Below, one piece after another: positions 10,774 through 64,000 of a stretch of 64,000 nucleotides of DNA (positions are counted from its first letter, which is position 1; every line of letters starts with the position of its first letter). The notes under the pieces were generated by a model. It saw only the letters and a list, made by a program, of their open reading frames with translations. It did no database searches and had not been told where the DNA came from. The translations under genes and the position numbers were made by a program. The stretch is taken from NCBI GenBank assembly GCA_964252035.1, contig OZ176207.1; one strand, 5' to 3'. This DNA comes from Podarcis erhardii (taxonomy: Eukaryota).

Positions 10774-11901
<1,128 letters not shown>

Positions 11902-18158: not shown

Positions 18159-18287
<129 letters not shown>

Positions 18288-18530
18288 TTAAAAACCCCAA
18301 AACTTTACTACTGAGGTGCAGATTTCCAAATTGGTGATAAGATAGCCCCCTAGAACCAATAGATTTGGGGTTTCCTCCATCCCCTCCTCAACTTGAGATA
18401 GTTAGGCCTCACACTCAACAGACTATTGCAAATAAGGGAGAAATATTTACTGTTTGATATAATGGAGCACTAGCTCCTTAAAATTATTCTCCCCTCCCAC
18501 CATAATCAAGAAAGAAGATTATTGTTGTTA

Positions 18531-18752
<222 letters not shown>

Positions 18753-19065
18753 TCAGAGCCGTTTCCAAACATAACACCCATCACTTAACACAATGAGGAT
18801 AACCAGATATGCAATCAAGCACAGTAACTAAAGTTCCCGCAAAGCTGCACATTTTAGGGTGGGGGAGAGTAGTCTAGTTGTTGCTATTATTAAATAATGG
18901 GGTATCAGAAACCCTTGCTGATCTATTACGAATCATGCAAATTCTGCAGTAGATATAGAGCTAACATCATTCCACCTCCAATCTGTCATCACAATTTCCT
19001 CATAAAAATGAGAAAATAATACTTCTAGAAACGTACCAATTGCACAGGAGTAAAAGATCACCTAC

Positions 19066-19191
19066 CTGAAAATCCAGGAGTAAGTGATGCAAGTTTTCGT
19101 GCTAAATTATCTCTATTCAAGCTACTATCCAACTTCAGGGGCCTAAGATGAACTTTGAAAATAGATGCTCTTCCCTTTATATCTGGTGGCC
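19066..19191 (-). CDS. AFG3L2: AFG3L2 exon 12 ([15 protein letters not shown]...TPGFS)
   Basis: 126 nt; canonical splice sites. Confidence 0.96.
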
Positions 19192-19336
19192 CTTGAAGAG
19201 TTTGAAGAAAAAGCAATTAACTTTACAATTGCAAACATTTCTGCTTTCTAATAGTCCCACTGACCAGCTTTAGCTAACATCTCCTCTCTGTTCTCATAGT
19301 TTTGAGTTGACATCTTTATGAGGTCAAAGTTGTCTA

Positions 19337-19492
<156 letters not shown>

Positions 19493-20738
19493 TCAGTAGC
19501 AAAAATGTTTTTTTCCAAAAGGCTATGGTGAATCTTAAGCATGCTATTTTGTAAATTCTGAAGTGACCAGAGTATTGGCAATTCTGCCTTCCGTCAAGGA
19601 CTTAACGACTGAGCAGGTGAAGAGAACTACACCGTGTTAAAGAATGAGGAAAAGATGCAAAACTATTGCATACTATGTAATATGAGTGCTTACAATTCAC
19701 AGGACAAGGTACTTTCAAAATTCTGAACCACTGTTACTACAGCCTACAACAACTTCTTCTTTGGCGATCACTTGTAGCCAAGTAAGATTGTCTTCCATAA
19801 ACATGGTTTTAACAATGAGTCCGTAAGTGACTGTGGAGGCCAATTCTGGATCCACACGTCCTTCCACAGTGGGAACATTGGTTTCCAGGTGACCTTATAT
19901 GGCAGGCAATAGCTTATGAAATGGGAAACAAGTCAAAGAGAAGTATCCAACTAAGTTATACTCAGAGTAGAACAAGTGAAATCAATAGGCTTAAGTTAGT
20001 CATGATATCACCCACAGAGATTATGGGTTATGTCCCCCAACCATCTTGAGCAGATTTGAATGTGCCAAGGGGGCTGTAGTGGGGAGACGTCCCATTGTGC
20101 AAACAGAAGTCTGTTTCACTTGCACACTGGCAGAATTGGATACAAACCTTAGTGTACAATCCCATACAATTAGCAATAAGGTTACAAAACAAAAAGAACA
20201 GAAAGATGCTTTCTGCTATGTTCATTCAGTATCATGAAAAAACAACAACCCACTCTTTCTAAAAGAGATTATAAAGTCTAGGTTATATCCAATGTCAGTC
20301 ATACTGGGAATAGGCCGCTGAAATTGATCAAAAAAGTTAACTCTATTTATTTCAATGGGCATAATCAGGTTGTGATTATGTAGATATTATTCTACCCTTT
20401 TCTGGTTATTAACATAAAACACATCATTTTCATCTTCAAATATGTTGTTACTAATAAAGCCATCCAACCCCTGAGGGGGTTATTGGTTTGTTTTTGTTTT
20501 ATTACTTGGTATGTATTTTATGGAGGACACCAGGCTGGCGACGCTGGCTCTAACCAGCACCTGCCTACATTCCCTACTGATTTTTAACAGCCAGTTGATT
20601 TTTGACATAGGTTTTCATCACGTTTGGTTGTGTCCCCATGCAGCTTGTTTCATACCAGTAGGAGCTGTTTCCAGGTAATTTGTTTAAGAATGAAGTGTTA
20701 CTCTATATGTAAGTGGCAGTAGGAATAATAAAAATTTA

Positions 20739-20933
<195 letters not shown>

Positions 20934-21111
20934 TCAAAATCATGTATTGCCACACAGCTACGGTAGTTGTCCATCAACACTACAGAATACACCACAGAGT
21001 TAGCATTCATGTCATTGAAATAGGTATACAACATTAGACTCATTTGTCCGTCTATCAGGAAATTATATTGCAGCTAACATGTTAGGTTATGAAATAAATT
21101 GAATGCTTTTA

Positions 21112-21341
21112 CAGTTGTACCTTTGTTTTCGAACAGCTTAGTTCTCGAACGTTTTGGCTTCTGAACACCGCAAACCCAGAAGTGACTGTTCCGGTTTGTG
21201 AACTATTTTAGGAAGCCAAATGTCCAACAGGGCTTCCGATTGGCTGCAGGAGCTTCCTGCAGCCAAACTTTGGTTTACGAACGTTTTAGAATTTGAAGAG
21301 ACTTCTGGAACAGATTCTGCTCGACTTGCAAGGTATGACTG
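21112..21341. mobile_element. Tigger-like MITE family D
   Basis: TA-CAGTTGTACCTT...AAGGTATGACTG-TA. Confidence 0.75.
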
Positions 21342-21390
21342 TAATTTGAAAGCTGTAGAAATCAAACTCTGGAAAAGTGTTTGGAACCAT

Positions 21391-21600
21391 GGGTGGTATT
21401 CAACTACTACATCCTGTCAGCGCAAGGATTTCTACTTGTGCAAAGGGACTGCCCCCCCTCACTGTGTGTGCCCTCCCCAAATCTGCTCCAGAAGATTGGG
21501 AAAACGCTTAGAACAAATTTGGAGGTGCATAGGGGGAGGACATTCTGTTGCACAAGCAGAAATCCCTGCGCTGACAGAATGAGACTTAGTGAACAAAGAA
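21391..21600. mobile_element. Non-autonomous inverted-repeat element with about 33-bp arms (21411-21443, 21548-21580)
   Basis: ATCCTGTCAGCGCAAGGATTTCTACTTGTGCAA vs its near reverse complement; a related element lies near 49620-49810. Confidence 0.6.
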
Positions 21601-22005
21601 TTCTGCCCAATGTTTTTATTTCTACATAAGTACTTGAAACAAATGCTTTATGCTGGAAGAGCCAGCAGTGTCCAAAGTACAAGAGCTAGACTTGGATGAA
21701 GGAGACCTTGGTTAAAATTGCATCTTTCCCTAAGAGCCGGGACTTCTTAAAATAGCATAAATTTCCTACACAACTCCGTAGAGAAGTGTGGAGAACCTTT
21801 GTGTACATGGATGATAAATCTAGCCTTCCTTCAACAGCCATCAAATTTAGAATACCATTCGCTTGTCCTTATCAACTGTTAGGAAAAAGAAGACGACAGT
21901 GGCAAAATGCAGTCAGAGGGCTACAGCTCTGAAGCAATAAGATTTCCTAGAAACTAAGTGAGATATCAGAGTTATTAATTAAAATAGCTTGCAGCCAGCT
22001 ATTTA

Positions 22006-22326
<321 letters not shown>

Positions 22327-22355
22327 TTAAATTTTCTTCAATATGAGTCAATATA

Positions 22356-23051
22356 CCGTATTTTTCGCTCTATAGGATGCACCTTGTTTTAGAGGGGAAG
22401 AACAAGAAAAAAAAAAATCTCCCCCTCTCTGCCCAGCGCCCCTTCAGCGAAGCGGCAGGAGGCACTGCGCAGAGAGGGGGAGATTCCCCCTTGTTTTCCC
22501 CCTCTAAAACAAGGCGCCGTTCAAGGTGCATTCAGTAGCTTCAGGCGGCTACCTTGGAAGCCTGGAGAGCGAGAGGGGTCGGTGCGCACTGACCCCTCTT
22601 GCTCTCCAGGCTTCAGGTTCCTTTTGACCTGCTTTTTGGGGCTGGGGGGGGAAGCCCACCGCCAGCCCCAAAGAGCAGGTCAGAGAGCAGCGGAAAGGCG
22701 CGCAGCGGAGAGGCTGCTGCCATAGCCGCGTGTCACCTCTCCAGCTGGGAGAAGGTACGCGGGGCTATGGCAATACCCCCACCTCCCGTAAAAGCCCACA
22801 GGAGCCGCACACCCTTTAAGGAGCACGCGGCTCCTGTGGGCTTTTCTACGAGGAGGGAGAAGGGACTGACTGGCCGCGTCAGTCCCTTGTCCCTCCTGAG
22901 GAAAAGCCCGCAAGAGCCGTGCAGAGCTTGTGTGCGGTTTTTTGGGGCTTTTCCTGCCTGCCTCCCTCCTGCATTTGCTCCATAGGATGCACATACATTT
23001 CCCCTTCATTTTGGAGGGGGGAAAGTGTGTCCTATAGAGCGAAAAATACAG
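22356..23051. mobile_element. TcMar-Tc2-like non-autonomous DNA transposon
   Basis: TA-CCGTATTTTTCGCTCTATAGGA...TCCTATAGAGCGAAAAATACAG-TA TIRs; GC-rich interior. Confidence 0.85.
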
Positions 23052-23175
23052 TATTTAGAACTCTGTTTCAGGGAAGTATAACACGTTTCCTAGTTCCACA
23101 AATAACTCAAAATTTTCTCTTTTTCCTGAAATGTTCTAGTCCTTGAAAAAGTAATTTGAATTTCACATAACTGTA

Positions 23176-23400
23176 CAGTGGTACCTCGGGTTACATACGC
23201 TTCAGGTTACAGACTCCACTAACCCAGAAATAGTACCTCGGGTTAAGAACTTTGTTCAGGATGAGAACAGAAATTGTGCTCCAGCGGTGCAGCGGCAGCA
23301 GGAGGTCCCATTAGCTAAAGTGGTGCTTCAGGTTAAGAACAGTTTCAGGTTAAGAACGGACCTCCGGAACGAATTAAGTACTTAACCCGAGGTACCACTG
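23176..23400. mobile_element. MITE family A, copy 2 (AFG3L2 intron 8)
   Basis: Same TIRs and body; opposite orientation to copy 1. Confidence 0.9.
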
Positions 23401-23842
23401 TGTTTTGAATGGGAGTGCAAGCTGCAATATAGCTAAAGTAACCAATATTTGATCATGATCACACAAGATGGTCAATTTAATAAGTCTTCACAAGATTCAC
23501 CCACTATTTATTAATATCCATGAGGATATGATACTCTAACCTAATTTTTGGCCCTATGCTAATTCAGATTTTAAAAAATCAAGTTGGACAAATAGTATTT
23601 GCTTGCAGGTAAATTTGAGTAAGAAAGAACAGTGTCCTCATTTTACTGAAAGGGAAGCACAGAAAACAAAAGAATTTCATAATGTCACTAAATGAAGATT
23701 CAGTGGCTATGTGAAATGAGTTCTTATGATTCCACAAACTCTTGTGATCATATTTTTCAAATTCTGATGTTAGGTCAGAATATAGGAATAATGCAAATTG
23801 TCACTAAATTCAAAAAAATTAATCCCCAGCTAAAAGAGCTCA

Positions 23843-24190
<348 letters not shown>

Positions 24191-35739: not shown

Positions 35740-36680
35740 CAGAGGCCACGGCGACACAAGATACTACTCTTGTGCTTTCTGTGCGGGCAAAGATCAAAAC
35801 ACACCCCATGCCAAGGGCAGCCTTAGAATCCCACGCTCGGCTCACGACTGATGCAGCCGGCGCAGAGGCGCTACGGATCCGCAAACCCGCGAGGCAAAGC
35901 GACTGGATCCGCCGAGGAGTCACGCAATTGGCAAGGAGCGGCGCGTTTCCAGAGCCGAAGCCCTGACGTCACTGGCGAGGAATGTGAGCTGGGCGTCCCC
36001 TGTTCAAGGTCTTCACACGGACTTGACGCGTCCTTTCCCCGGGCATCGAAGGGTGCAGGGAGGCGGGAGCGAGCCAGGTGTCTTTCCAGCGGAGAGGAGC
36101 GGCGATTGGCTGGCGCGGGGAAGAAGGGCGGGTGGGAGACGGCTGACGTCATCGCCCACCCTCCTCCGGGGAAAAGCGCCGCCCTTTCCTTTGGGCCGGA
36201 GAAGCCGGTTCTTTCCATTGAGCCGCCATTAACGCCGCTGCTTTTACAGACAGGATGAAGATCTGGAGCTCGGAGCACGAGTTTGGGTAAGGCGAGGACG
36301 GGAGTGGCGCGCGTTCCGTCCTTGACAGCAGCAGCCCGCGCTGGCGGAGGAACAGAAAAACCACTGGTTCTTCCGAGCTCAGTGTTGCCTACACTGGCTG
36401 GCAGCGGCTCTCCAGGGGTCTCTCCCCGTCCCATCGGGAGATGCTGGGGGTTGAGCCTGTGCAAAGGAGATGCTTTGGCAGTGAGCTACAGCCCTTCTCT
36501 AGCTGAGCTATGGAGCTTTCTTTGGAAGGGAAAACGAATAAAACTCTCCTCTTCCCTTCTCCGTTTCCGCTTGGTATACAACTCGTGCTTTTTGGTCACC
36601 GCGAGAGGACATCGGTAGCATCCTGCCCCGGCGCGCTTGCTCCCTCACCAAGGGCTTTAAACATGGTCTGTCGTGGGTTT
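35740..36680. promoter_or_regulatory. CpG island, PRELID3A promoter: two full CRE palindromes (35964-35971, 36144-36151), inverted CCAAT (36105), GC box (36126), YY1-like GCCGCCATT (36222)
   Basis: Motifs read directly from the sequence; CpG-rich. Confidence 0.85.
36255..36286 (+). CDS. PRELID3A: PRELID3A exon 1 (MKIWSSEHEFG)
   Basis: 32 nt; PRELI/SLMO N-terminus; GG|GTAAGG donor. Confidence 0.95.
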
Positions 36681-39600: not shown

Positions 39601-39790
39601 GTTAACAGCCTAATAGACCAAATATGAAGCAAGTGACAGGGGAGGAAGAGAAAAATAAGCAAATTCAGGTACCAACTCTTACATGATATTAAATACTGTG
39701 TTTTGGAATGTATGCTTTGTATACCATAAATGCAAACTAAAATGTTCAGTTTTAATTAAATAGCATTTCATACAGAGAATTCTTAATGCA

Positions 39791-41508
<1,718 letters not shown>

Positions 41509-41742: not shown

Positions 41743-41967
<225 letters not shown>

Positions 41968-43099: not shown

Positions 43100-43170
43100 A
43101 TAACACTTACAAATCTTATATCAGTTGATGAAAGGTTGGTATATACGCCACACCCTGAGAACCCGGAAAA
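43100..43170 (+). CDS. PRELID3A: PRELID3A exon 4 ([23 protein letters not shown])
   Basis: 71 nt; canonical splice sites. Confidence 0.95.
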
Positions 43171-43200: not shown

Positions 43201-43398
<198 letters not shown>

Positions 43399-44213: not shown

Positions 44214-45447
44214 TTTGTATACTGTTCTTCATGCATAGATCTCAGGGCGGTTCACAGCATTAACCTGTTCTGGGAATTCCCTCAACCCTCCAGAGTATAT
44301 TTCATATGCAAGCACTCCATGCATTAAAAGATACAGGAAGCTGAACTCCTGACCTCTTTATCTGGCCCTCACCTCCCTCCTTGCCTTTCCTGCAGCTAGA
44401 AAACAACTATCCTCTTGGAGTAAAGATTATTTCCCCCCTTGCCTAGATGCAGCTGGGATGGGGATGGTCAACCCTGCCTCCACATATGTTGTTTCATCAC
44501 CATGCTCCAAAGCACCCTCCCCATGCTCCTAGTGACTCCGACCTAATCGTGGCAGGCGGGGGGAGTGTTGTGTGTGGTGTGAGAGAGAGCATGGCATGGC
44601 CATGCCCACTGCTGACACAGGGCCCTCAGAAATGGGCTACGAGAGAACGTGACAGGCCCATCCCTGTTCTCAGCCTTCAACAATTCAGCATGCTACACAA
44701 TAAACCCTTTATTAAGTTCCGTGGGACTTCCGTGGGTACATTGGGATTTGACTATAAAACAGCAAATGAATAACTCAGCCTTATAAAGACTATTATTAGG
44801 GGGGAAATGAGCATTTCAAGTATTGTAATCCTAAACAAATATTTCTGTTCTCAGTCCTCCATGACTTCTGCACTTGTACAACAATACATTACAGGTCTCA
44901 TTCAGGTGCTCTACTGTTTCTTCTTCATTCTCTTTTAATGCTATATAAAGCAGCCTGTTTTAACTAAGTTTCCTTACAGGTGATCCCTCTCTCTTTACTT
45001 TTTCAACTTAGGGCCACTTCACACTTGCGGTACTACCAGATTTCTAGGCAGAAGTTGCTCTATAGGGATCTGGTAGCACGTCAAGTGATCCAAGTCTAGG
45101 ATGAGATGCATCTGTCAGAAGCATGCATGCTCATTTGAGCTCAACTTGCTTTTACCTAACTTATTCTACTGGGATGCATCCTGCTTTGGCATTCAGTTAA
45201 ACCTTTACATGATATAATTGCTTGTTACCAATATTTGCTAAGCGTGCTGCTCAACTAAGTCAAACTCAAGGTAGGCTTAGTCATAACTGTTACATCCATT
45301 CACTTTCAGTAGGTTTACTTGGACTTAGTTGGATATCACTCTCAGTTTACAATGCTTGATTTTCCTGTAGGCTCTTGAGATTTACAAGACTGTGATGGTG
45401 GAATAACTTTTTGTCATAAGTTGTACATCTTTTCTGTGTTACTCCAG

Positions 45448-45501
45448 GGGTGGGATGCTATTGAGTGGACAATTCAACATTCTGACAGTGTTCTAAGATA
45501 G
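45448..45501 (+). CDS. PRELID3A: PRELID3A exon 6a (GWDAIEWTIQHSDSVLR*), giving a 172-aa isoform
   Basis: ctccag acceptor, phase 0; resembles the mammalian PRELID3A end (recalled as GWAAIEWIIEHSESAVS). Confidence 0.9.
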   Translation, partial: GWDAIEWTIQHSDSVLR

Positions 45502-46410
45502 CAGTCTCTTTCTACAGCTGCATTTTGTACTAATTAGTGGTAATACCAGCATTTGTTACCTTGGTACAGCATTTCAGCTTCTAGCAAATCTGTGCATGTT
45601 GTTGTCATGTTACTTGAAAGCCTGCATGCCTCGTATATATACACACATTGCATATAGAGGAACAGCACCCTTATTCTTTAACTCTGGAATTGGGGGGGGG
45701 GGGGCGTCCGTACTGTCTAACACAGGAAAAGGTTCTTAAGAACCTGCATGTGTGGGCCACTAATATGGCCCACCTTCTGTTCTTTGGTAAATCTCTTTTG
45801 AGTAAGTGGAATACTGTTAAAAGAACAGCTGCACCTTGGCCCCAGAGTATTTTGGAAGTAGGTGAAGCTCTGTACAACCAGTCCTCTTGATCCAATGCAT
45901 GGAATGCTTTGGGGTGAAATACTTGAGGTTGTTAACTAGTTCATGTTACTGCTGGACTTAGCCTACAGTATGGCAGTTCTTGCCTATCAGTGTAGAAATA
46001 CAGTCCCATCACTGCTTGGACAGAAGGGTTCTCGTTTAAAAGAAAGCAGTTTATGAAGTCACAATTAGAACATTTGCACCTGTTTACTTGGTGCTTGTTG
46101 GTTTTTGCTTTTGAGGCAGCTTAAAATCTGTGCAAAAAGAATGCAAAAAGAAGAAACTGGTTTTCAAAAGTGCCAGCTATTAAGCTTTATTGTCGCTCAG
46201 CCCATTTTGGAACTGTCATTCCTCCCTCATGGTGCCTGAGAGGCAGCAGCATTTATATAAGTTGCTTCAGAAAGTCCAAGATTGATCCTGAGGAAGGAAC
46301 TTCTGTTCTGAAACACATTGTACTATCATAAACTTCAGCAGTTGGCACTTGGGAGAATTAGGTTCTGCTTTTTCTCTTCTTTGCAATATTTCTAGTGTCT
46401 GGGCCTCCCT

Positions 46411-46480
46411 TTGTTTAGTCGTTTAGTCGTGTCCGACTCTTCGTGACCCCATGGACCAGAGCACGCCAGGCACCCCTGTC
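46411..46480 (-). mobile_element. BovB (RTE) LINE 3' terminus
   Basis: Reverse complement of GGGGTCACGAAGAGTCGGACACGACTAAACGACTAAACAA. Confidence 0.85.
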
Positions 46481-48465
46481 TTACTTTAATTAGGCAGGAA
46501 TCATGCAAAACCTTTTGGCTGCACATTTTTGTTATGAGCACGAGCCTCACTCTATTCTTCCTGCATTTTGTGAGGGGAGATTAGAAGTGTTCACTTGCAG
46601 TTTTGCCCCAACATGGCCAACTGTGGTTTGCTTGTTTGCAAAACCAGGATTGGATCCTGGATGTGGGGGAAGATGAATTGAACATATCAGTTTGTTTTCT
46701 CATCCTGTTATGGCAAACTACGATTTGTTGCAGACTAGAAGTTGAAACAGCTTCTCTTCCTCCACATGTAAATAGGGAACACGGGGAAATATATGAACAA
46801 CAAACCATGATTCCTTTTTTCACATCTAAAATCCAGGCTTTTATCTAAACATACACTAATATATAAATAGTTTTGCTAAAACAAAACAGATGTTTTTGTC
46901 TAAATGCATTGTTTTAAGAGGCATTGCTAGCATCTGTTTGGCTTGCGGGGAACTTCAGTGACCACCTTTTTCGTTCCTTGAGCTTGACTGCCAAGCTTGG
47001 AAACAGATTATTTGACTGTTGATCCTGCCCTTAAAACCCTCAATTTTCATTTGCAGAATACAGTTACCAAACATGCCTTAGTGTTGTGTAATACTTAACT
47101 ACTCCCAATTTTGGAGTGTGTGTATATATTACAAAAAAAAATAGTAAACTCTCACTGTATGTTTTCAGTTTTACCATTAAGCCTGTGAAATGTTTCAGAG
47201 TTTAAAATTTTATGCTCTCAATCGTTTGTTAAGTAGTAACCACTGAAATTATGTCCAGTTCTTAACTCTCATTCTGTATGTTCGGTGTGCTTCCACTATG
47301 TACGTAAATATATTAAAAGGTGCATGCTTTAATAGGAAATATGCTTGCTCAAGTCATATACTAATATGCTGTTTTATGGTACAACAGAAACTCAGTAAAC
47401 CAATCCTCTGTCAGATTGTTTTTGCTAGTTCCGTGCATGCTAAAAAGAACCCCGGTCTTATTGGTTCAGCATTTTGTTTTTAAAGTCTTGCCAGATGTCT
47501 ATGGGAAGCAAATAAGTAAGTCATCACCCCAATAGACCACTCTAACTAAGGTCATTTCAAACTCAACAAAATCGTTCAACATGCTCAGTTACTATGTAAA
47601 CGAATGACCAGCCCTCCCAAGGAACGCCGGCCAGACTGGATCAAACTTGACATCTGCTCAATTGTGTCACATGCAGCTGTATATATCATTGTTCCTGAAA
47701 TAATTACTGGCATGGGGGAGTCTGATGGGGACTTTTTCCATTCAGATCATGGTGAGTAGTTGAAAAGATAAGCCTCCTCTCCCTACTGGTTGCCTTCCCA
47801 GTAAGAATCTGTCTCCCTGTGAATGTAATTATTTAAGATGCATACTACATATTAGGCAAATGTCTAGTTTGGTCCAAAAAATCCACAGAGTTCCGCCCTC
47901 TCCTTAAAACCTAGTTCACCCCACCAATGTGCTTAGAATCTACTCTAACCAAGCTTGTCATTTCATTTCTTAGAATATGTTATGATGTACGTGTGCTACG
48001 CTTTAAGCCACAAAACTTGTATTTAGTGTTATAGCATGGAGGTTTTTTGATCAAAAGCACTTGGTGCTATAACAATGCAATATTTCCTGTTCTATCTCCC
48101 ATAGCAATCCTGTGAATTTATTAATTTGACATGTCATATGTCTGTTATTAATGGGGCCTTTTTTATTCTTATCTGATGCTTTGATTTTTAAATCCAACTT
48201 GTTCAGTTTCTAATGCTCAGAACTTCATTCAGTTGAAGGATTGGGTTAAAGGTGGTTAGTTCTGACCCAAGGCCAGGAATGGAAATCACTTCAAACTGAA
48301 TGGTGTTTTCAAAAGCAACAAATAATTGAAGAAATTCAGATAATTCTGGCCAAGTTTTTTGGGTCATATGCACACTACAGTCTTTTCTACAGGAAATTCT
48401 GGGCACTGCAATACCATCATCCAGTAACAATTACATACACACTCTCTCTCTATATATATATAATT

Positions 48466-48645
48466 GTCCAGTAGCACCTTAGAGACCAACTAAGTTTGTT
48501 CTGGGTATGAGCTTTTGTGTGCATGCACACGAAAGCTCATACCAAGAACAAATTTAGTTGGTCTCTAAGGTGCTACTGGACTTTTTTTTTATTTTTAATA
48601 TATATTTCTACTGCGTCAGACCAACACGGCTACCTACCTGAATCT
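48466..48645 (+). mobile_element. Penelope-like element terminal fragment with 116-bp fold-back palindrome
   Basis: GAAAGCTCATACC...TTGGTCTCTAAGGTGCTACTGG...CAGACCAACACGGCTAC PLE end plus an inverted copy. Confidence 0.8.
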
Positions 48646-49290
48646 AGAATTACTAGAATTGTTTGGAGAAAAATGTGATATTGTGATATTCTTAGAAGCC
48701 CAGTATAAGGTTACAGTGTAGATAAGTCCAAAGGCTGTTTCTTCAATCTATTGGTTCATTACACTTTCTATTTCAAAACTAAGGGTGGCTTCCAGTTAAC
48801 TTGTTCCATGAGCAAGGATTTTCACTTGCAGAAGGAAACTTACATCCCTCTTCTTTCACTGTGCATGCCCCATGCCCTCCCCAAATCTGCTTTATAGGGT
48901 TGGGGGTATAGCAGAACAGATTTAGTGGGGTGCCAGGGAAAGGAGAGGGGGTTAGTTCTGTTGTGCAGATGGAAATCTGCACACTGACAGAGCAAGCTAG
49001 TTGCCTTTTCACAATTTAGAAACAACACTTCAAATAATATAGCCATCTCTCTCTCTCTTCCAGGAGTGTTCACCTGAGCTGTTAAGTTTTCAGATTTCAA
49101 CTGAGCACATTTGTATCCAGAAAGACTATGTAACTGTCATTTAATCCAGTAGTGTTCTGTTTCAATTAAAACAAGCATCTATAAAAAAATTAAGTTGGTA
49201 GTCATGGTGTAGTACAGGCTTAAAACTAACAGTAATTTGGCTCGAAATGTTAAGCTTTAAGCTATTTAGTATTCTATACAAATATGTGTG

Positions 49291-49510
49291 AAAGCATGTC
49301 AAAGTGAAAGTAGATAAATAGGTACCGCTCTGGCGGGAAGGTAAACAGCGTTTCCGTGCGCTGCTCTGGTTCGCCAGAAGCGGCTTAGTCATGCTAGCCA
49401 CATGACCCGGAAGCTGTACACCGGCTCCCTCGGCCAGTAAAGCAAGATGAGCGCCGCAACCTCAGAGTCGGTCACGACTGGACCTAATGGTCAGGGATCC
49501 CCTTTACCTT
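49291..49510 (+). mobile_element. Sauria SINE (Squam1) 3' part
   Basis: GTAGATAAATAGGTACCGCT...CCCCTTTACCTT tail typical of lacertid Sauria SINE. Confidence 0.85.
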
Positions 49511-50640
49511 CAGGTGGCCTTTTGCATCTGGCCAGGTGATTAGGCTCCTAGCCTGAAAACTTATGGAGGCTCTCACTTTTTTGTTGAGTTTCTCTACTTG
49601 AGTTTACTGAGGTTTTCTCCTCAGTTCCACTAGTGCAAGCACTTTTAACTATGCACGAGAACTTACCCTACCTGCACACCCTCTAAATCTGCCCCGAAGG
49701 GTTGAGGGCAAACTCAAAAAATATTTAGAGGGTGCGCAGGTTGAAGCAGTTCCATTGTGCAGCCAGGAGTGCTTGCACTGGTGCAACTGTTGAGTTGAAT
49801 ACTGCCCAACATGTGTTTCAAGTTCTTCTTATTTAGGTTTGCCTTCTGTAGCTGGGGTGTAGCTGGTCTTTAGGCCCAGTTAAACTGAATTCTTGCAAAA
49901 GCAGTGCTCTTGCTTCCTACATTGCTCTGTACTGAGCATCAGTAATGGTAATTAGTGTTTCATGATAGAGAGTAAACAGGATGGGAAAGAAACCATAAAC
50001 TATAAGTTCATTAATAACGTTCATTAGGACTTGTAACAACTTTTCCACTGCTAGGATGAAGCGGAAGAAATTGAAGGGGGGAAATATTATTGATGGGAGA
50101 AGGGCTAGTATTAGGCCTCATGTCTGTTCTGTTGCAATCTTACCATGGTAATGGAGGAAGCCACAGAAATCTGATAGAAAAAAAATCAGGTTGTTCAGAG
50201 GCATGCCTGGGATAAGAAGCAAATAATGCTTTGCACTTTGGAAAAAGTGGGTAGTCAAAACTCTCTCTAGCACTGATCCAAGTGCAACAGTCTCATGTAA
50301 TTGTGCCTTGCTAGACAGATCTAACATTTGTACTCTGCAAAAGAGTTAGCTTGTAGTCTTGTAACTTTGTTGGCCTATTATTACTAAGAAAAATGTATTG
50401 TCTAAGCAGATCATCCTTCAATTTAAGGTTTTCCTTGTTACAGAAGCAAAGGTGGACTAGAATGAAATAATCTTGTCGTACAAATCCAATGGCACAATTC
50501 ATTATGATACATTCATAATTCAGAAGACAACAAAGCAGTTTGCTTTGGGAGATCTTTTGGTGTCTGACAGAGGAAAGATTTAGAAGTTTAACATCAATGT
50601 ATCTGGTCAATCCACTTAGCTCTTGTTCCTTCTTTAACAG

Positions 50641-50733
50641 GGTCGAGAAGCCTTGGAATGGGTGATTGGCGAACTAACTTCGACGCGAGAGAGCATGAAG
50701 TCCGCAATGGCAGCAGCATCAGCGGAGGACTGA
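50641..50733 (+). CDS. PRELID3A: PRELID3A exon 6b (GREALEWVIGELTSTRESMKSAMAAASAED*), giving a 185-aa isoform with a PRELID3B-like tail
   Basis: Strong pyrimidine tract and acag acceptor, phase 0; GREA-EWVI...MAAA resembles the PRELID3B/SLMO2 tail. Confidence 0.85.
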   Translation, partial: GREALEWVIGELTSTRESMKSAMAAASAED

Positions 50734-53700
50734 TGGAACTGTGGCAGAACTTTATTTTTCCATTATATTTTCTCCTTGCCAGGATGGATATTCCATTGTT
50801 TTTTATTTAGAAATATATATGTTTATATATTGAAATTTTACAGGTCAGAAGCAACCCCCCCCCCATTTTTAAGCCTTTCTAGGGCCCTCTATTAATCCAC
50901 AGTGTAAGTTAACAATTTATTTTTTTTTGCTTTCCCATGGCCTCTAGTTACAAGTGCTCAAATCTGATAGAGTATAGTGACCTTAAGTTCTACTGAAGTT
51001 AAATGGAACTGGCAGAGCAGATTGAAGATTGACATCTACATAAGCACCAAACTGTGCCTTGATCAGAGCTGAGAGAATAGACTTCCCATCTTATATAACC
51101 ATTTTCTTGTACTTGAAATTTATTTATTTATTTCTTTAAAAGTGCAGCTGCCGTTCTTATTCTGTAAACAACAAATAGGTACAGAAAGCACTGGAGATCT
51201 TCTCTCTCTCTCTCTACAGGCTAGATAAGTATAGTGGGGAGGTGAAATATGATGGCACAGGATGTTGACTGACCCCTGATGTGATCGTCTATGTAGTTCT
51301 GCAACACAACCTTCCTTTTACTTAGTGGAGCCTGAAAGAAGATCTGAAAAACCTTCCCTGAAATGAAGGTTGGTGTGCAACAAAGTTCCATGGTGGATTG
51401 TGCCCTTTGTTGGAGGCTGGAGATCTCCTCCTGAGACTTTGTCTTTGTGGATATTAATTCTTCCTTGCACTGTTCAAATGCAGATTCTGAACAAGGTGTT
51501 CTAGCACATTGCCTCCTAGTATTTTTACTGAAACCACTGAGAGCAGCCATTTTGTTGTGGTAAAAATGGCTTGAATCCTCTCTTGTCCATTTTTGTTTTG
51601 ATTTTTCAGTAGCTAATTTATTTCCATATATGTGAATATACACTCTGGTCACTTATTATGTGAAGACAATTGATACCTCAGTGGGAAGTACTAGGAAACT
51701 TATTTTCTATATGTAACGGGCATATGTTTGGAGTACTTAGTTGTGTAATTCATTTCTTACTTTTAGCAATGGATACAAGACCATAAAGGATATTTATGGC
51801 CCACCCCACATTTCACACCCATCTTCTGGCACTCTGTTTAGCAGTTCCGGGGAGGAGACTGTTTCATAGCGGTAGGGGGAATGTGATGTTGTGAAGCACA
51901 ACCACCTCTCCCACCAAGCCAACAGCTTTCATCATTGAGCAAGTTCAAACTCCATTTCTGACCTCTGATTTCAATGGAATTTTCTTCTGTACAACATCTA
52001 GAAGTAGTTCTATTGAAGCCGGTACGGACAGAGCACTTGCTTAAAACTAGGTTATGATGGCAGTAGCCCTAGATGTTCCACACAGAAGATTAGAGATAAA
52101 GAAGAGTGAATAGCAGGCTTTTCAATGGAATTATTTTGGAAGCATGCAGGTCCATCTAACTTCATAAGTAGTTCATGGTGTTACATTTTGTGTGATTCAA
52201 AGTTTTGTTAACAGTTCATTCATTGATGAAAGCCAATCTCCGTGGAACGGAAAGCTGCAGACATCTATAAATTAATGCACTTCCAAGCATTGTAGAGTTC
52301 AAAACTGTAGTTTAAAACTGTGCAAGAGGAAAAGTTGGAAAGCTCCTGATTCACAGAGAATGGCAAATGTCTTGGGCATGAGCACAAGATGTCTGCCTAC
52401 AATCCAGTATAATGAAAACAATTCCTTTCTCTCTTCAAACTTTGCTTGCAGTTATCTCTTCTGAATATTTTGCAAAAAGCCGAAAGAAAAAACTGAAGAA
52501 TAAGAAAAAACTGTGGAATAAGATGCCAAAATTCAGCATACTAGAACTCTTACATGGAAGCATAACAACATGCCAAGAAAACTTAGGATGTAGCTAAGCT
52601 GCATGCACATCTAAGTGGAATGGCGATGAATTGTTATTGGAGCCTTTTTTGCTCCCTGCCTGCCCTCCCCCGCCCCCACCAGCCTGAATAACCCACGGCA
52701 TTAACAATTTTTAAGCCCTGGCAGAAAAAGAGCTTTTTTTAATATGACCAAAGCATTTTTCTTCCATTTCAATATACTTTGTACAAAGAATAGTTACAAA
52801 GAGCCTGCCTTCTGTGAAGGGTATCAGGCCTGTCATGGAAGAGGTGGTGTGGCTGGGGCAGAGAAGTTCAGCATTCTAGCCCATATGTGTGTTCATTGCA
52901 AGAAGTGGACCAGTTAACCAAAATCACCAGCTTTCATATGGAATCCTTCACCCCACTTCCTTTATTTTGTGTGAAGGTAAACTTGTCCATGTTTATTCAT
53001 GTGCACTTCTTCCTTCTGTCTTCTATACAATCGTGGTTGAGTTTCCTTTAATAGTCCTACTCCTGTCTCCTAAAGGCGATTAGCCACACTCTTTCTTACG
53101 TTTGCTCTTTCTTGTTCCTTCCACGGATCTTGGCTGATGGAACTCCCATATGACTGCTGCTCCACAGACTGTCACTTGGTGTCTTGCTTGGTGCGATATT
53201 GTCTCTTAAGGCTGTTCTCTTAGTTCCCTAGTGGATCTTAGAGCTCACAAACCCCCGGGCAGGCAAGCGTGGTACTATTGCTTTTATACTGTTTACTTAC
53301 CAAATAATGACCATAGTCTTACATTTTCCTGGCTAGCACTTATTTATTAGATATTTAACATGGCACAGGAATATGGGCTTCTTTGGGAGGAAGAGCAGGA
53401 TAGAATTTAATAATAAAATCATGGAAAATAAAAATACGTTGCATTTTCACTCCTTAGCATGTGAAAATAGAGCATGCGCTCTTTCGATCATAGCTGCCAC
53501 TACCCTTGCTTCTCGCCCCTTCACATCTTCAGTAAAAGCACTCCATGCTTTTCCTTTGTCCTTGAAGGCCCTGGCATTCTCTGTTCTAGGTGACTGGAAA
53601 TCAAATCTTTTTATATCTAGTAGCTTATCTACCTTCCTGAAACTTACCAAAACCTCACCTGTAGGGGGTTCTTCTTTTGTTCTGTACCATCTTCTGCCCC

Positions 53701-55350
53701 TGAACATTCCAAATAACCCACCCTTGAAGCTTTATAAAATCAAAAATACATGAGCTGAGAGAATCTGCATCGCTTCCCACACAAGTATTGGCTTAGTGGG
53801 ACAGTACACAAAGGGATGGTGGTGCAACAATTTAGGACTTTGCCCATTCAGCCTTTTCCTTTTCCTTTACCCTGCATGGTCAGGATTTGCTTTACTTTAG
53901 AAAGAAGTTATTCTTCCAGTGACAGCACCTTTCTGAATAGGACTCTGAAGAGAGCATTTTAAAACTTGTTTCCAGGCTCTGTCTCACAACTGTTACATTC
54001 AGTGAGAAGATTACCATGCATGCCATGTATCATTCCAGGGTAAGGAGAGTCTCTAGCTACTAAATCTCTTCCTGTCTCATGGTTCTTTAAAGGAAAGACA
54101 ATAGTTTTCAACAGATAGCAGTAAACTTAACTGATACCTAAAGTTCTATTGGCCAGTTTCACTAACAAATACTGATATTCGTTTGAAGAACTGGGTGTTG
54201 GACAGTACACTGTCTCCTGCTGCACTTTTTGTTCCTATGTGCAAATAAAGGCAAAGCAGCTGTACTTCTAAGAGTTACGTAGCACAGGAAGCTGAAGCAG
54301 GTCACACACAGACGAGGAGAAAACTGCAATTTTTGAAACGGTATAGTAGTCCTGTCTTTCTTGGCATTTGGTCACAATCCTTTGTTTAATCCGAACTACC
54401 TTGATTGTTCAAAAACCACTGCTTTTCATTATGTAAACAACCTTGATTAACACTGCTTTCATGTAGGTGCCATTAATGTGAAGGTGTGCTTGTGGGGAGG
54501 GGAGCGAATGCTTAATCAGCTGTGACTTGAAGGATAATTGCATGCAGAAATGTTTCTCTTCCTGTATCTCTTGCCTTTTCCCACCTGCGTTTAGACTGTA
54601 AGCTCTTCTGAGCAGAGAATCTATCTGAAATGTTAAATGCTATGGACATCTGGGGCTATAAATAACATGACCTACTTAAAAATAGCAAACTGTCTTTTCT
54701 TTTTTCTATATAGTAAAACAAAAGACTGCTTTTGTGTTAACTGCCAAATGGGATGATCATGCAGTACACAACTGAGTCACAAACACTAAAAATAGCACAA
54801 GGGAGACCAGTAGGTGCCGCCCTGGAATTAACCAGCCCATCATCGCAGTTAGGAGGTTTTGGGAGAGTACCTTGGCAGTCATTAATTGTGGTTGAACTAT
54901 TAATACAATGCTTTTATGTTATTACTACAGCTAGGGCACACAGAAAATTTAACTTACATTGTTATTTTGGTACTGCTAAGATGTACCCTTTTAAAAAACA
55001 AAACCTCAGTCTTCACTTCCTTTTCTCCCAGAAGTTGGAAGCCACTTACCTATGAGTAAGCCCTACTAAATACAAGAGGTATTATTTTGCATAAACATGC
55101 AAAGGATTGTACTATGTATCTATTGAGAAAGCGGCGCTTGTACATTAGCTTCCTTAAAGAGTTATTAGTGCATGGAGACATGGACTAACTGGAAGTACGA
55201 TTTTAACAAAATAAGGTGAGGGACCCGTCTTAATTGTGCAGCCATCAAGGTGGTGATTGTAAATCTTGTGAAAACAATCAATGAAACTTAATTCTAACCT
55301 TTGGGGGAAGTCCCATTCTCATGTGTTTACAATAAAAGGGGAAAAGTCCT

Positions 55351-62708: not shown

Positions 62709-62967
62709 TCAGATCTCATTGATAGTCCTCTCAGAAGGGCAATACTCTGAGGTGCCTGGGGAGGACATGTAGAATGACTGGGTTTTCCTTTTTAATCTGG
62801 CTCGCTTGTTAGCCAGGGAGAGGCTGCGGCGGCTTGAATTGATGATTTCTGAAATGAACTTTTTGCAGTCCACACACACTTCCATGGTGCTCCAGTCCTC
62901 CATTAGCTCTTTTGGAAACAGTGCTTCTTCATCTGATTTATCTACAGACTTGGACTTTGAGGATAAC
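62709..62967 (-). CDS. SPIRE1: SPIRE1 last coding exon ([14 protein letters not shown]...[21 protein letters not shown]...ERTINEI*); upstream exons lie beyond the window
   Basis: Recognisable SPIRE1 C-terminus (end of FYVE-type domain and FSI motif); ttttcag acceptor; synteny. Confidence 0.96.
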
Positions 62968-64000
62968 CTGAAAATAAAGCAACAATTCTATTCTTATTAG
63001 GGTTATTCAGCTTTCCAATTGTACTAGAGAGGTGAACTCTATGCACTCTAAAATAACAAATCTGTCTCTCACAGGTCTTTTTACTTCCTAACATATTGTG
63101 TCAGGGGAGAGAGGTGTTTCTTGTGGCCAGTTATGATTAATGCAAAACACAGATTAATCATAGCAAAATTGTGCTATTTGGCTAACAGTTATGAAGGCAT
63201 TTATGATCTTAGAAAATGGTTATATACAAGCAAGAGAAAAATAAACCTTTGCAAATTAGATTCATATATGATTTTGCACATTGTTTCTATAACTTTAACG
63301 GCAACCTTAAGTTGAAAAACTAGTTATGTTTCTCTAGCAAATAATGAAACAAATTTTATGACTAGTGAGTACCAAAAAAGACAAATGCAAATTCAAATTT
63401 TAATTTTAAAAAGCTAAGCAAGTTCTTTTCTTGCAGCAAAACCTTAAAAACTAAACATTATGTCCGATTGCAGCGTCCTGTTCATGCAAATGAAACTTGC
63501 CCTTCTGCTATAATCTTGCAGCCCCTTGTACACCTCCAAAATCTGCTCTAAAGAATTGGGACGATGTAGAGCTGATTGGGAGAATTAGGAGGGTGGTGAT
63601 GAAAGGAAATTATGATGTGTCTGTTGGAGCAACACTGGATTTTAGAATAGATAATTAAATGAATATTTCTCTAAAGTTACTTCAGCATGCAGGATTGGGT
63701 GCAGAGATAAATTTTAATATAATTTTAAATATTAATGTGAAGATCCAAAGAGGCACATGTGTACATAAGATCCACTTATTGAAGTTTGGGTTTTTGTTTT
63801 TTTAGGGGAGGGAGGTGTGCCAATTTCTTCTTTCAGAAGCTACACCAGGAAGCCTACCAACCTTTGGGGTGGCTTTTCAGGGAGTTTGAAGGACTCCCAC
63901 AAGAAAAGGGAGGTTGAAATGCTTCTATAGATTGAACACCTTTTGATCACTGCCTTGAAACTTGTTGAAGGATAGGGTTTAAAGCTTTCACAAGTACCTA

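What the first reader, a model, noticed from the sequence alone, without database searches (positions are those of the whole stretch)
45448..50733. PRELID3A carries two homologous C-terminal exons: a 3A-type / 3B-type switch in one gene
After exon 5 there are two phase-0 exons encoding versions of the same helix: 6a GWDAIEWTIQHSDSVLR* (172 aa, mammalian PRELID3A-like) and 6b GREALEWVIGELTSTRESMKSAMAAASAED* (185 aa, resembling the paralogue PRELID3B tail as I recall it). The shared G-x-x-A-x-EW-x-I pattern points to exon duplication. A donor GTG|GTAATA at 45540 lies 38 nt after the 6a stop, inside the 50-55-nt NMD-escape window. So 6a may be a cassette: inclusion gives the short tail and makes 6b UTR, skipping gives the ancestral-type tail. 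This helix borders the lipid cavity of PRELI/Ups proteins, so splicing could tune phosphatidic acid vs phosphatidylserine transfer, membrane docking or YME1L turnover. The functional part is inference; predicted isoforms may already be in databases.
Basis: partly seen in the sequence, partly recalled or inferred. Interest (0 to 1): 0.75.

Follow-up and report, generated by a model that had tools for sequence, protein, structure and literature searches.

The report
PRELID3A alternative C-terminal exons, already annotated
This lizard or snake PRELID3A gene really has two alternative last coding exons giving a short mammal-type tail or a long PRELID3B-type tail, but the arrangement is ancient, shared across vertebrates and already present as predicted isoforms in public annotation.

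Summary
Exons 1-5 (465 nt, phase 0) can join exon 6a (45448-45539, 17 codons plus stop; 172 aa) or exon 6b (50641-50733; 185 aa).

Exon 6b is the standard last coding exon of PRELID3A in birds, turtles, tuatara, squamates, a newt and coelacanth. It is the exon seen spliced in RNA-type contigs of four runs from close relatives. Invertebrate homologues carry the same tail type, so it is ancestral.

Exon 6a encodes the tail of the mammalian, frog and elephant-shark protein. Its 17-codon frame, its stop and a donor 30-38 nt after the stop are conserved across tetrapods (15 nt in medaka). At DNA level the block is as conserved as the coding exons or more. Two UGCAUG (RBFOX-type) motifs follow the donor. 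This fits a regulated cassette exon that escapes nonsense-mediated decay.

No 6a inclusion was seen in the four runs, so a switch in this lineage is inferred, not shown.

RefSeq already lists both forms for one gene, for example Thamnophis elegans X2 and X3. I found no paper describing the exon pair. The functional claims remain untested.

Verdict: real, tidy, low novelty, moderate-to-low interest.

The parts
36255..36286 (+). PRELID3A exon 1, coding part (start codon at 36255)
41328..41496 (+). exon 2
   Evidence: Pfam PRELI PF04707 scores 62.7 bits on this exon alone.
41797..41886 (+). exon 3
43100..43170 (+). exon 4
43260..43362 (+). exon 5. It ends in phase 0 at AAG|gtaggt.
45448..45539 (+). 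Exon 6a, a 92-nt candidate cassette exon: 17 codons of the short 3A-type tail, stop TAG at 45499-45501, then 38 nt up to the donor.
   Evidence: Zero differences over 45300-45666 in relatives whose neighbouring intron differs by 3-5%.
45529..45534 (+). ACTAAT (ACUAAY) motif at the 3' end of exon 6a. It reads ACTAAC in snake, gecko, turtle, pigeon and Xenopus. It looks like a Quaking-type motif, by my own knowledge.
45540..45695 (+). Conserved intron block behind the 6a donor (gtaata). It holds two TGCATG motifs at 45593-45598 and 45623-45628.
50641..50733 (+). Exon 6b, coding part: 30 codons of the long 3B-type tail and stop TGA at 50731-50733. This is the acceptor used in all four RNA-type runs.
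50734..54540 (+). 3' UTR of the 6b exon. The end is approximate, taken from contig lengths of 3.9 kb beyond the acceptor.
   Evidence: records 8 and 16

Best explanation
This is the squamate orthologue of PRELID3A (slowmo homologue 1), a PRELI-domain mitochondrial lipid-transfer protein. It lies between AFG3L2 and SPIRE1.

After exon 5 the pre-mRNA has two choices.
- The default, at least in the RNA sampled, is to splice exon 5 directly to exon 6b. This gives a 185-aa protein whose distal alpha3 helix and disordered Ala-rich end are of the ancestral PRELID3B-like type.
- Alternatively the 92-nt exon 6a is included between exons 5 and 6b. It supplies a homologous but shorter end of helix alpha3 and a stop codon, giving 172 aa. 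Exon 6b then becomes 3' UTR.

The stop lies only 38 nt before the 6a-6b junction, so the inclusion mRNA should escape nonsense-mediated decay.

Exon 6a arose by duplication of the last coding exon, at the latest in early jawed vertebrates. Its splice sites and about 100-150 nt of flanking intron are under strong constraint, including two UGCAUG motifs 53 and 83 nt behind the donor. Inclusion is therefore most likely regulated, plausibly by RBFOX-type factors in neurons, muscle or heart.

Shown: the exons, frames, conservation, use of 6b, and database isoforms.
Inferred: the 6a-6b junction in this lineage, the tissue regulation, and any functional difference between the two proteins.
For: - Sequence and splice sites.
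- Orthology: AFG3L2 exons on the minus strand at 18-24 kb, and a candidate SPIRE1 last exon on the minus strand at 62.7 kb, named from memory with no Pfam hit. The same neighbours flank the gene in gecko, pigeon and snake loci.
- 6b is in use. In four RNA-type runs of relatives, depth is 34-140 from 50639 onward against 4-8 in the intron. In all four runs the high-depth exon contigs begin at 50639. A 710-nt contig carries 481 letters upstream of the acceptor and has no piece on 6a.
- 6b is conserved. The long tail appears in 108 of 119 newly returned hits, mostly birds, plus turtles, tuatara, gecko, newt and coelacanth and in six non-gecko squamates.
- 6a is conserved. The short tail appears from elephant shark to mammals. 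RefSeq lists isoform pairs in one gene for Thamnophis X2/X3, Pelodiscus X1/X2 and ostrich X1/X5.
- The donor TAGTG|GTAA and a 30-38 nt stop-to-donor distance hold in tetrapods. In medaka a consensus gtaagc donor lies 15 nt after the stop.
- A teleost mRNA contig stops matching the medaka genome about 4 nt before that donor, 11 nt after the stop.
- The 6a block is 84-89% identical to snake, gecko, turtle and pigeon, equal to or above the constitutive exons.
- TGCATG at +53/54 is present in window, gecko, turtle, pigeon and marmot. A second one lies at +83 to +95 in sauropsids. Local enrichment gives P about 1e-3.
- Mouse Prelid3a is listed with an exon junction downstream of its stop (PMC7452722).
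- Structure: exon 6 encodes residues 156 onward of helix alpha3. Pfam PRELI covers residues 15-168 in both forms.
Against: - No joint 45539->50641 and no spliced 6a contig appeared in any of the four runs. Depth over 6a is fully explained by unspliced, intron-level contigs.
- The runs are only guessed to be RNA, their tissues are unknown, they are contigs that drop rare variants, and they come from relatives 3-5% divergent, not the window's own species.
- The 6a donor is weak (gtaata).
- RefSeq short-tail models in reptiles may rest partly on protein homology rather than reptile RNA.
- RBFOX regulation rests on motifs alone. No paper in the library links PRELID3A to RBFOX.
Confidence: 0.75

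Rival explanations
1. Only 6b is ever used in squamates. Exon 6a would then be a conserved block kept for another reason, such as an intronic regulatory element, and the 172-aa form would not be made in this lineage.
For: No 6a inclusion in four RNA-type runs from four studies. No Logan-derived reptile protein with the short tail appeared among the listed hits.
Against: The 17-codon frame, the stop position and both splice sites are preserved in snake, gecko, turtle, pigeon and Xenopus. There are zero differences in 367 nt against a 3-5% background. The same exon is the canonical coding end in Xenopus laevis (a curated-type NP_ record), elephant shark and mammals.
Confidence: 0.12
2. Exon 6a is an alternative terminal exon with its own polyadenylation site, not a cassette spliced on to 6b.
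For: The donor gtaata is weak. ATTAAA lies at 47312, next to a conserved intron element.
Against: The donor position is conserved over more than 300 My, and medaka has a consensus gtaagc donor there. A teleost mRNA stops matching the medaka genome within about 4 nt of that site. There is no canonical signal for 1.8 kb and no raised depth in 45540-47300. Mouse has a junction behind the stop.
Confidence: 0.06
3. Inclusion of 6a serves mainly to tune expression, through UTR choice or decay, and does not make a protein with different activity.
For: Mouse Prelid3a rises in UPF3B knockout neurons and is flagged for a downstream exon junction. The 38-nt non-coding part of 6a is as conserved as its coding part.
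Against: The stop-to-junction distance is 15-38 nt in all species checked, below the usual 50-55 nt rule. The peptide GWDAIEW-I-Q is conserved from shark to mammals and is the crystallised human form, as 4XZV and 8AG0 match the gene.
Confidence: 0.07

Closest known systems
RefSeq predicted PRELID3A isoform pairs in other reptiles, e.g. Thamnophis elegans X2 (XP_032078148.1) and X3 (XP_032078149.1)
   Same: Same gene and same two tails. The snake long tail has the same 30-residue shortened form, and the short tail differs from the window at 4 of 17 residues. The window's 172-aa product is 162/172 identical to X3 without its N-terminal extension.
   Different: These are computational models. No paper in the searched library discusses the exon pair.
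Mammalian PRELID3A/SLMO1, 172 aa (PDB 4XZV, 8AG0, in complex with TRIAP1)
   Same: Same PRELI fold. The tail is encoded by the 6a-type exon. The marmot locus keeps the exon, a GTG|GT site 33 nt after the stop, and TGCATG at +54.
   Different: In mammals the short tail is the canonical product. No 6b-like frame lies within 10 kb behind 6a in marmot. A black rhinoceros model (isoform X6) still ends in a degenerate 6b-like tail.
PRELID3B/SLMO2 (PDB 6I4Y)
   Same: The first 21 residues of exon 6b align to human PRELID3B 169-189, and the Ala-rich end is similar.
   Different: It is a different locus. The window gene has 3A-type synteny (AFG3L2, SPIRE1) and a 3A-type exon 4. The alignment E-value for the short peptide is only 0.54.
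Tissue-regulated cassette exons with downstream UGCAUG (RBFOX-type) enhancers
   Same: A weak donor, intron flanks as conserved as the exon, and conserved UGCAUG within 100 nt downstream.
   Different: No binding or knock-down data, and tissue pattern unknown. This comparison rests on general knowledge of RBFOX targets, not on a test.

Membership tests
PRELI/MSF1 domain proteins (Pfam PF04707) | Significant match to the PRELI profile | tested here: met
   Exon 2 alone scores 62.7 bits against a cut-off of 27. The nearest full-length relatives score 187 and 178 bits over residues 15-168.
PRELID3A orthologue (not PRELID3B) | Synteny AFG3L2 - PRELID3A - SPIRE1, and presence of the 3A-type exon | tested here: met
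   AAA and M41 protease motifs lie on the minus strand at 18-24 kb. The same neighbours flank loci of proteins named PRELID3A. Best protein matches are all named PRELID3A. The SPIRE1 call within the window rests on one ORF recognised from memory, with no Pfam hit.
Cassette exon | Functional acceptor and donor, both conserved | tested here: met
   ccag|GGG and GTG|GTAA are conserved in six tetrapod loci, and medaka has a gtaagc donor.
Cassette exon | Junction reads on both sides (43362->45448 and 45539->50641) | tested here: inconclusive
   None seen in four contig runs of relatives. Exon 5 lay outside the 6,000-base stretch, contigs drop rare forms, and tissues are unknown.
Homologous alternative exons from tandem exon duplication | Same phase, same structural position, recognisable similarity | tested here: met
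   Both exons start in phase 0 at residue 156 inside helix alpha3. Five of the first ten residues are identical. A bird 6b-tail query finds Xenopus 6a as its best hit in that locus (67% over 9 residues, E 0.92). The similarity is too short for a significant score on its own.
NMD-immune stop upstream of a junction | Stop less than about 50-55 nt before the last exon junction | tested here: met
   38 nt in the window, gecko, turtle and snake; 35 in pigeon; 33 in marmot; 30 in Xenopus; 15 in medaka. The rule itself is established knowledge.
RBFOX-regulated exon | Conserved (U)GCAUG within about 100 nt downstream | tested here: met
   +53/54 in five species and +83 to +95 in four. The snake also keeps the first motif.
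RBFOX-regulated exon | Inclusion depends on RBFOX, with a tissue pattern of brain, muscle and heart | not testable with these tools

The most novel reading that the evidence does not exclude
A roughly 450-million-year-old regulated cassette exon, with RBFOX-type and possibly Quaking-type motifs, toggles PRELID3A between an ancestral PRELID3B-like long tail and a vertebrate-specific short tail. On this reading sauropsids default to the long form and mammals have largely fixed the short one, so the 172-aa protein studied in mammals is not what most reptile and bird tissues make. The swap of the distal alpha3 helix and tail would also change lipid preference, membrane docking or turnover.
Probability: 0.3. 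Interest if true: 0.5.

Novelty: already known. Interest (0 to 1): 0.3.

Why it matters
PRELID3A is the least understood of the vertebrate PRELI lipid carriers, and all structural work uses the mammalian 172-aa form. In birds, reptiles, a newt and coelacanth the standard product carries a PRELID3B-like tail. The mammalian tail comes from a deeply conserved and probably regulated alternative exon. This gives a natural pair of isoforms for testing what the end of helix alpha3 and the C-terminal tail do.

Published yeast work gives some precedent. The C-terminal helix and the Omega loop cap the lipid cavity, and truncations of the Ups2 C-terminal region were frequent among variants selected to substitute for Ups1 (PMC6408443).

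For genome annotation the finding adds nothing new, because both isoforms are already predicted.

Tried and rejected
- The spliced 172- and 185-aa products have no reference, so I did not type them into any search or fold. Instead I reached full-length relatives through the exon 2 translation and folded the nearest relatives: P0374, 175/185 identical, and P0272, 159/172 identical.
- Look-ups of short-isoform proteins in the contig index failed, because only the longest product per gene is on record.
- A search for a 6b-like frame within 10 kb behind 6a in Xenopus laevis and marmot found nothing. The exon is either farther away or lost as coding sequence there.
- Five paper searches found no description of the two C-terminal exons and no RBFOX link. 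A human SLMO1 'exon 1B' in endothelial cells and bovine 'exon 9' concern other exons.
- A hairpin that would pair the 6a donor with downstream intron is predicted in sauropsids. Its z-scores are only -0.6 to -2.2 and its pairs are invariant, so there is no covariation support. I do not claim it.
- The loose-end table of read laying was filled by SINE copies and did not list the letters upstream of 50639. The exon 5 to 6b join is therefore inferred from contig geometry and depth, not read directly.
- Human proteins appeared among search hits. I fetched no human contig, and I left alone the Logan contigs whose tail is identical to the primate form (P0290, P0297).
Full report
**1. The observation**

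The sequence is as described. I rebuilt the gene on the + strand.

- Exon 1 coding part is 36255-36286, exon 2 is 41328-41496, exon 3 is 41797-41886, exon 4 is 43100-43170 and exon 5 is 43260-43362.
- All exons have GT donors and AG acceptors. Together they hold 465 coding nt, so exon 5 ends in phase 0.
- Exon 6a starts at 45448, gives 17 codons and a TAG stop at 45499-45501. GTG|gtaata follows at 45539/45540, 38 nt after the stop.
- Exon 6b starts at 50641, gives 30 codons and a TGA stop at 50731-50733.
- The two products are 172 and 185 aa.

**2. Which gene**

- Exon 2 matches PRELI (PF04707). It also matches the solved human PRELID3A and PRELID3B chains about equally well.
- Orthology to PRELID3A follows from synteny. 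AFG3L2-type exons (Walker A, HEAGH) lie on the minus strand at 18-24 kb.
- A beta-tubulin last exon lies at 10.9-11.9 kb. An ORF that I take from memory for the SPIRE1 last exon lies on the minus strand at 62.7 kb; it has no Pfam hit.
- In gecko, pigeon and snake loci, genes whose products are named PRELID3A sit between a FtsH/M41 gene and a KIND-domain gene.
- SINE copies of a type I recall as the squamate Sauria SINE and the nearest proteins place the window in a non-gecko squamate.

**3. Exon 6b is the ordinary last coding exon outside mammals**

- A representative search with exon 2 gave a sparrow PRELID3A with a 3A-type body and a long tail.
- The word search from it returned 119 further proteins. 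Of these, 108 end in the GR[DE]ALEWVI long tail. They cover birds, turtles, tuatara, a gecko, a newt and coelacanth.
- A second search from a snake protein added Crotalus, Pituophis, Hemicordylus, Rhineura, Pogona and Anolis. All have the window's shortened 30-31-residue version.
- More distant, invertebrate-like representatives carry KGRQAMEWVI-type tails. The 6b/PRELID3B type is therefore ancestral.
- The first 21 residues of 6b align with human PRELID3B 169-189 (E 0.54 for so short a query).

**4. Exon 6a is ancient too**

- Scoring only the tail region of an ostrich short isoform found the tail GWDAIEW-I-Q-SES in many groups. These include elephant shark, Xenopus laevis (NP_001086156), many frogs, mammals, and teleosts, where the tail is a little longer.
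- It also appears as a predicted second isoform in ostrich, Pelodiscus, Heteronotia and Thamnophis.
- Cluster look-up shows pairs from one gene: Thamnophis elegans X2 (long tail) and X3 (short tail), Pelodiscus X1 and X2, and ostrich X1 and X5.
- A black rhinoceros model (isoform X6) ends in a degenerate 6b-like tail. At least some mammals therefore keep that exon.

**5. Cassette or terminal exon**

- In loci from gecko, snake, turtle, pigeon and Xenopus, the 17-codon frame, the stop and the sequence ...GTACTAACTAGTG|GTAA are conserved. The stop-to-donor distance is 30-38 nt.
- Marmot keeps GTG|GTCACT at 33 nt.
- Medaka has a consensus gtaagc donor 15 nt after the stop. A teleost mRNA contig stops matching the medaka genome about 4 nt before that donor, 11 nt after the stop.
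- Mouse Prelid3a is tabulated as having an exon junction downstream of its ORF (PMC7452722).
- The window has no AATAAA or ATTAAA for 1.8 kb after the 6a stop.
- These points favour a cassette exon whose stop sits inside the zone that does not trigger nonsense-mediated decay.

**6. Conservation pattern**

- BLASTN of the whole gene against the other loci shows the 6a block at 84% identity over 308 nt with snake, 89% over 250 nt with gecko, 88% with turtle and 86% with pigeon.
- That is equal to or above the constitutive coding exons. Exon 6b is only 70-74% identical.
- In the laid contigs of relatives, 45300-45666 has no difference in two runs of organism A (X1 and X10) and one difference in X6. 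Neighbouring intron differs by 3-5%.
- Behind the donor, TGCATG lies at +53/54 in window, gecko, turtle, pigeon and marmot. A second lies at +83 to +95 in the sauropsids. Two such motifs in 100 nt has P about 1e-3 at the window's own rate.
- The exon also ends in ACTAAY.
- From general knowledge, conserved downstream UGCAUG marks RBFOX-enhanced exons and ACUAAY is the Quaking core motif. This is a lead, not a test.

**7. RNA evidence**

- The single run search found 16 probable RNA contig sets, all from relatives. I laid four, from four studies and three organism labels, on 45300-51299.
- In all four, depth jumps from 4-8 in the intron to 34-140 at 50639 onward. In all four the high-depth exon contigs begin at 50639.
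- That start is the acceptor plus two letters, AG. These letters are shared with the end of exon 5 (AAG) but not with the end of 6a (GTG).
- One 710-nt contig has 481 letters upstream of the acceptor, about the 465-nt coding region plus a short 5' UTR. Depth over 6a leaves no room for a piece of that contig there.
- No 45539->50641 joint was reported. Depth over 6a equals that of single unspliced contigs.
- In these samples the long-tail mRNA therefore dominates, and 6a inclusion is undetected.
- Caveats: the RNA label is a guess, tissues are unknown, contigs drop rare forms, and exon 5 lay outside the 6,000-base limit.

**8. Structure**

- AlphaFold models of the nearest relatives have pLDDT 84 and 86. 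They place helix alpha3 at 138-169 in the long form and 138-165 in the short form.
- The last 14 residues of the long tail are disordered.
- Exon 6 starts at residue 156. The choice of exon therefore swaps the distal 10-14 residues of alpha3 and the free tail.
- Pfam PRELI covers residues 15-168 in both forms.
- The literature states that alpha3 and the Omega loop cap the lipid cavity. It also states that Ups2 C-terminal truncations were frequent among variants selected to substitute for Ups1 (PMC6408443).

**9. Verdict**

The feature is real, and the structural reading is right apart from the unproven use of 6a in this lineage. It is a general, ancient property of vertebrate PRELID3A and is already captured by automated annotation. 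I found no paper on it. Novelty is low. The conserved regulatory flank is the most interesting residue.

Noticed in passing
window 47379-47423: A conserved element in the intron between 6a and 6b, with core ACCAATCCTCTGTCAGA. It is identical in the window, gecko and pigeon. An ATTAAA signal and a TGCATG lie just upstream at 47312-47325. Function unknown.
   Followed up: partly
window 50641-50733; proteins P0356, P0374, P0377-P0381 against P0263, P0264: All non-gecko squamates sampled share a 7-8 residue in-frame deletion in the long tail (the KLNTEFEE stretch). Gecko, tuatara, turtles and birds keep the full 37-39 residues. This looks like a shared derived character of non-gekkotan squamates.
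   Followed up: partly
window 45524-45572: A predicted hairpin pairs the 6a donor GGUAAUA with downstream UGUUACC inside an outer UGUACUAA/UUGGUACA stem (-12.9 kcal/mol, z -1.9). Similar folds are predicted in snake, turtle and pigeon, but the pairs are invariant, so there is no covariation evidence.
   Followed up: partly
window 39786-40991 (+): A 401-codon open frame in intron 1 with no Pfam hit. Its end carries a CWKC...H...C cysteine motif that I recognise as the C-terminal part of a LINE-1 ORF2. It is probably a truncated L1 copy.
   Followed up: partly
window 10906-11901 (+), 18159-24190 (-), 62712-62987 (-): Neighbouring genes: a beta-tubulin last exon (Tubulin and Tubulin_C domains), AFG3L2-type exons, and an ORF that looks like the SPIRE1 C-terminal exon. 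By my recollection this is the same order as on human 18p11.
   Followed up: partly
window 46411-46482 and 49290-49501: SINE copies with very high contig depth in all four runs (up to 5e5). They filled the loose-end table of the reads tool.
   Followed up: no
L007 (Logan contig of SRR19345922) 825-880; L008 11918-11940: In a teleost mRNA, the sequence right after the presumed 6a junction begins GGACTGGAAG. It resembles the start of exon 6b (GGTCGAGAAG) at 8 of the first 12 bases. It may be a decayed 6b now serving as a UTR exon.
   Followed up: partly
protein P0383 (Diceros bicornis minor isoform X6): A mammalian PRELID3A model with a 6b-like tail that starts GREALEWVIGRLN and then degenerates. 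Mammals may still skip 6a at times.
   Followed up: no
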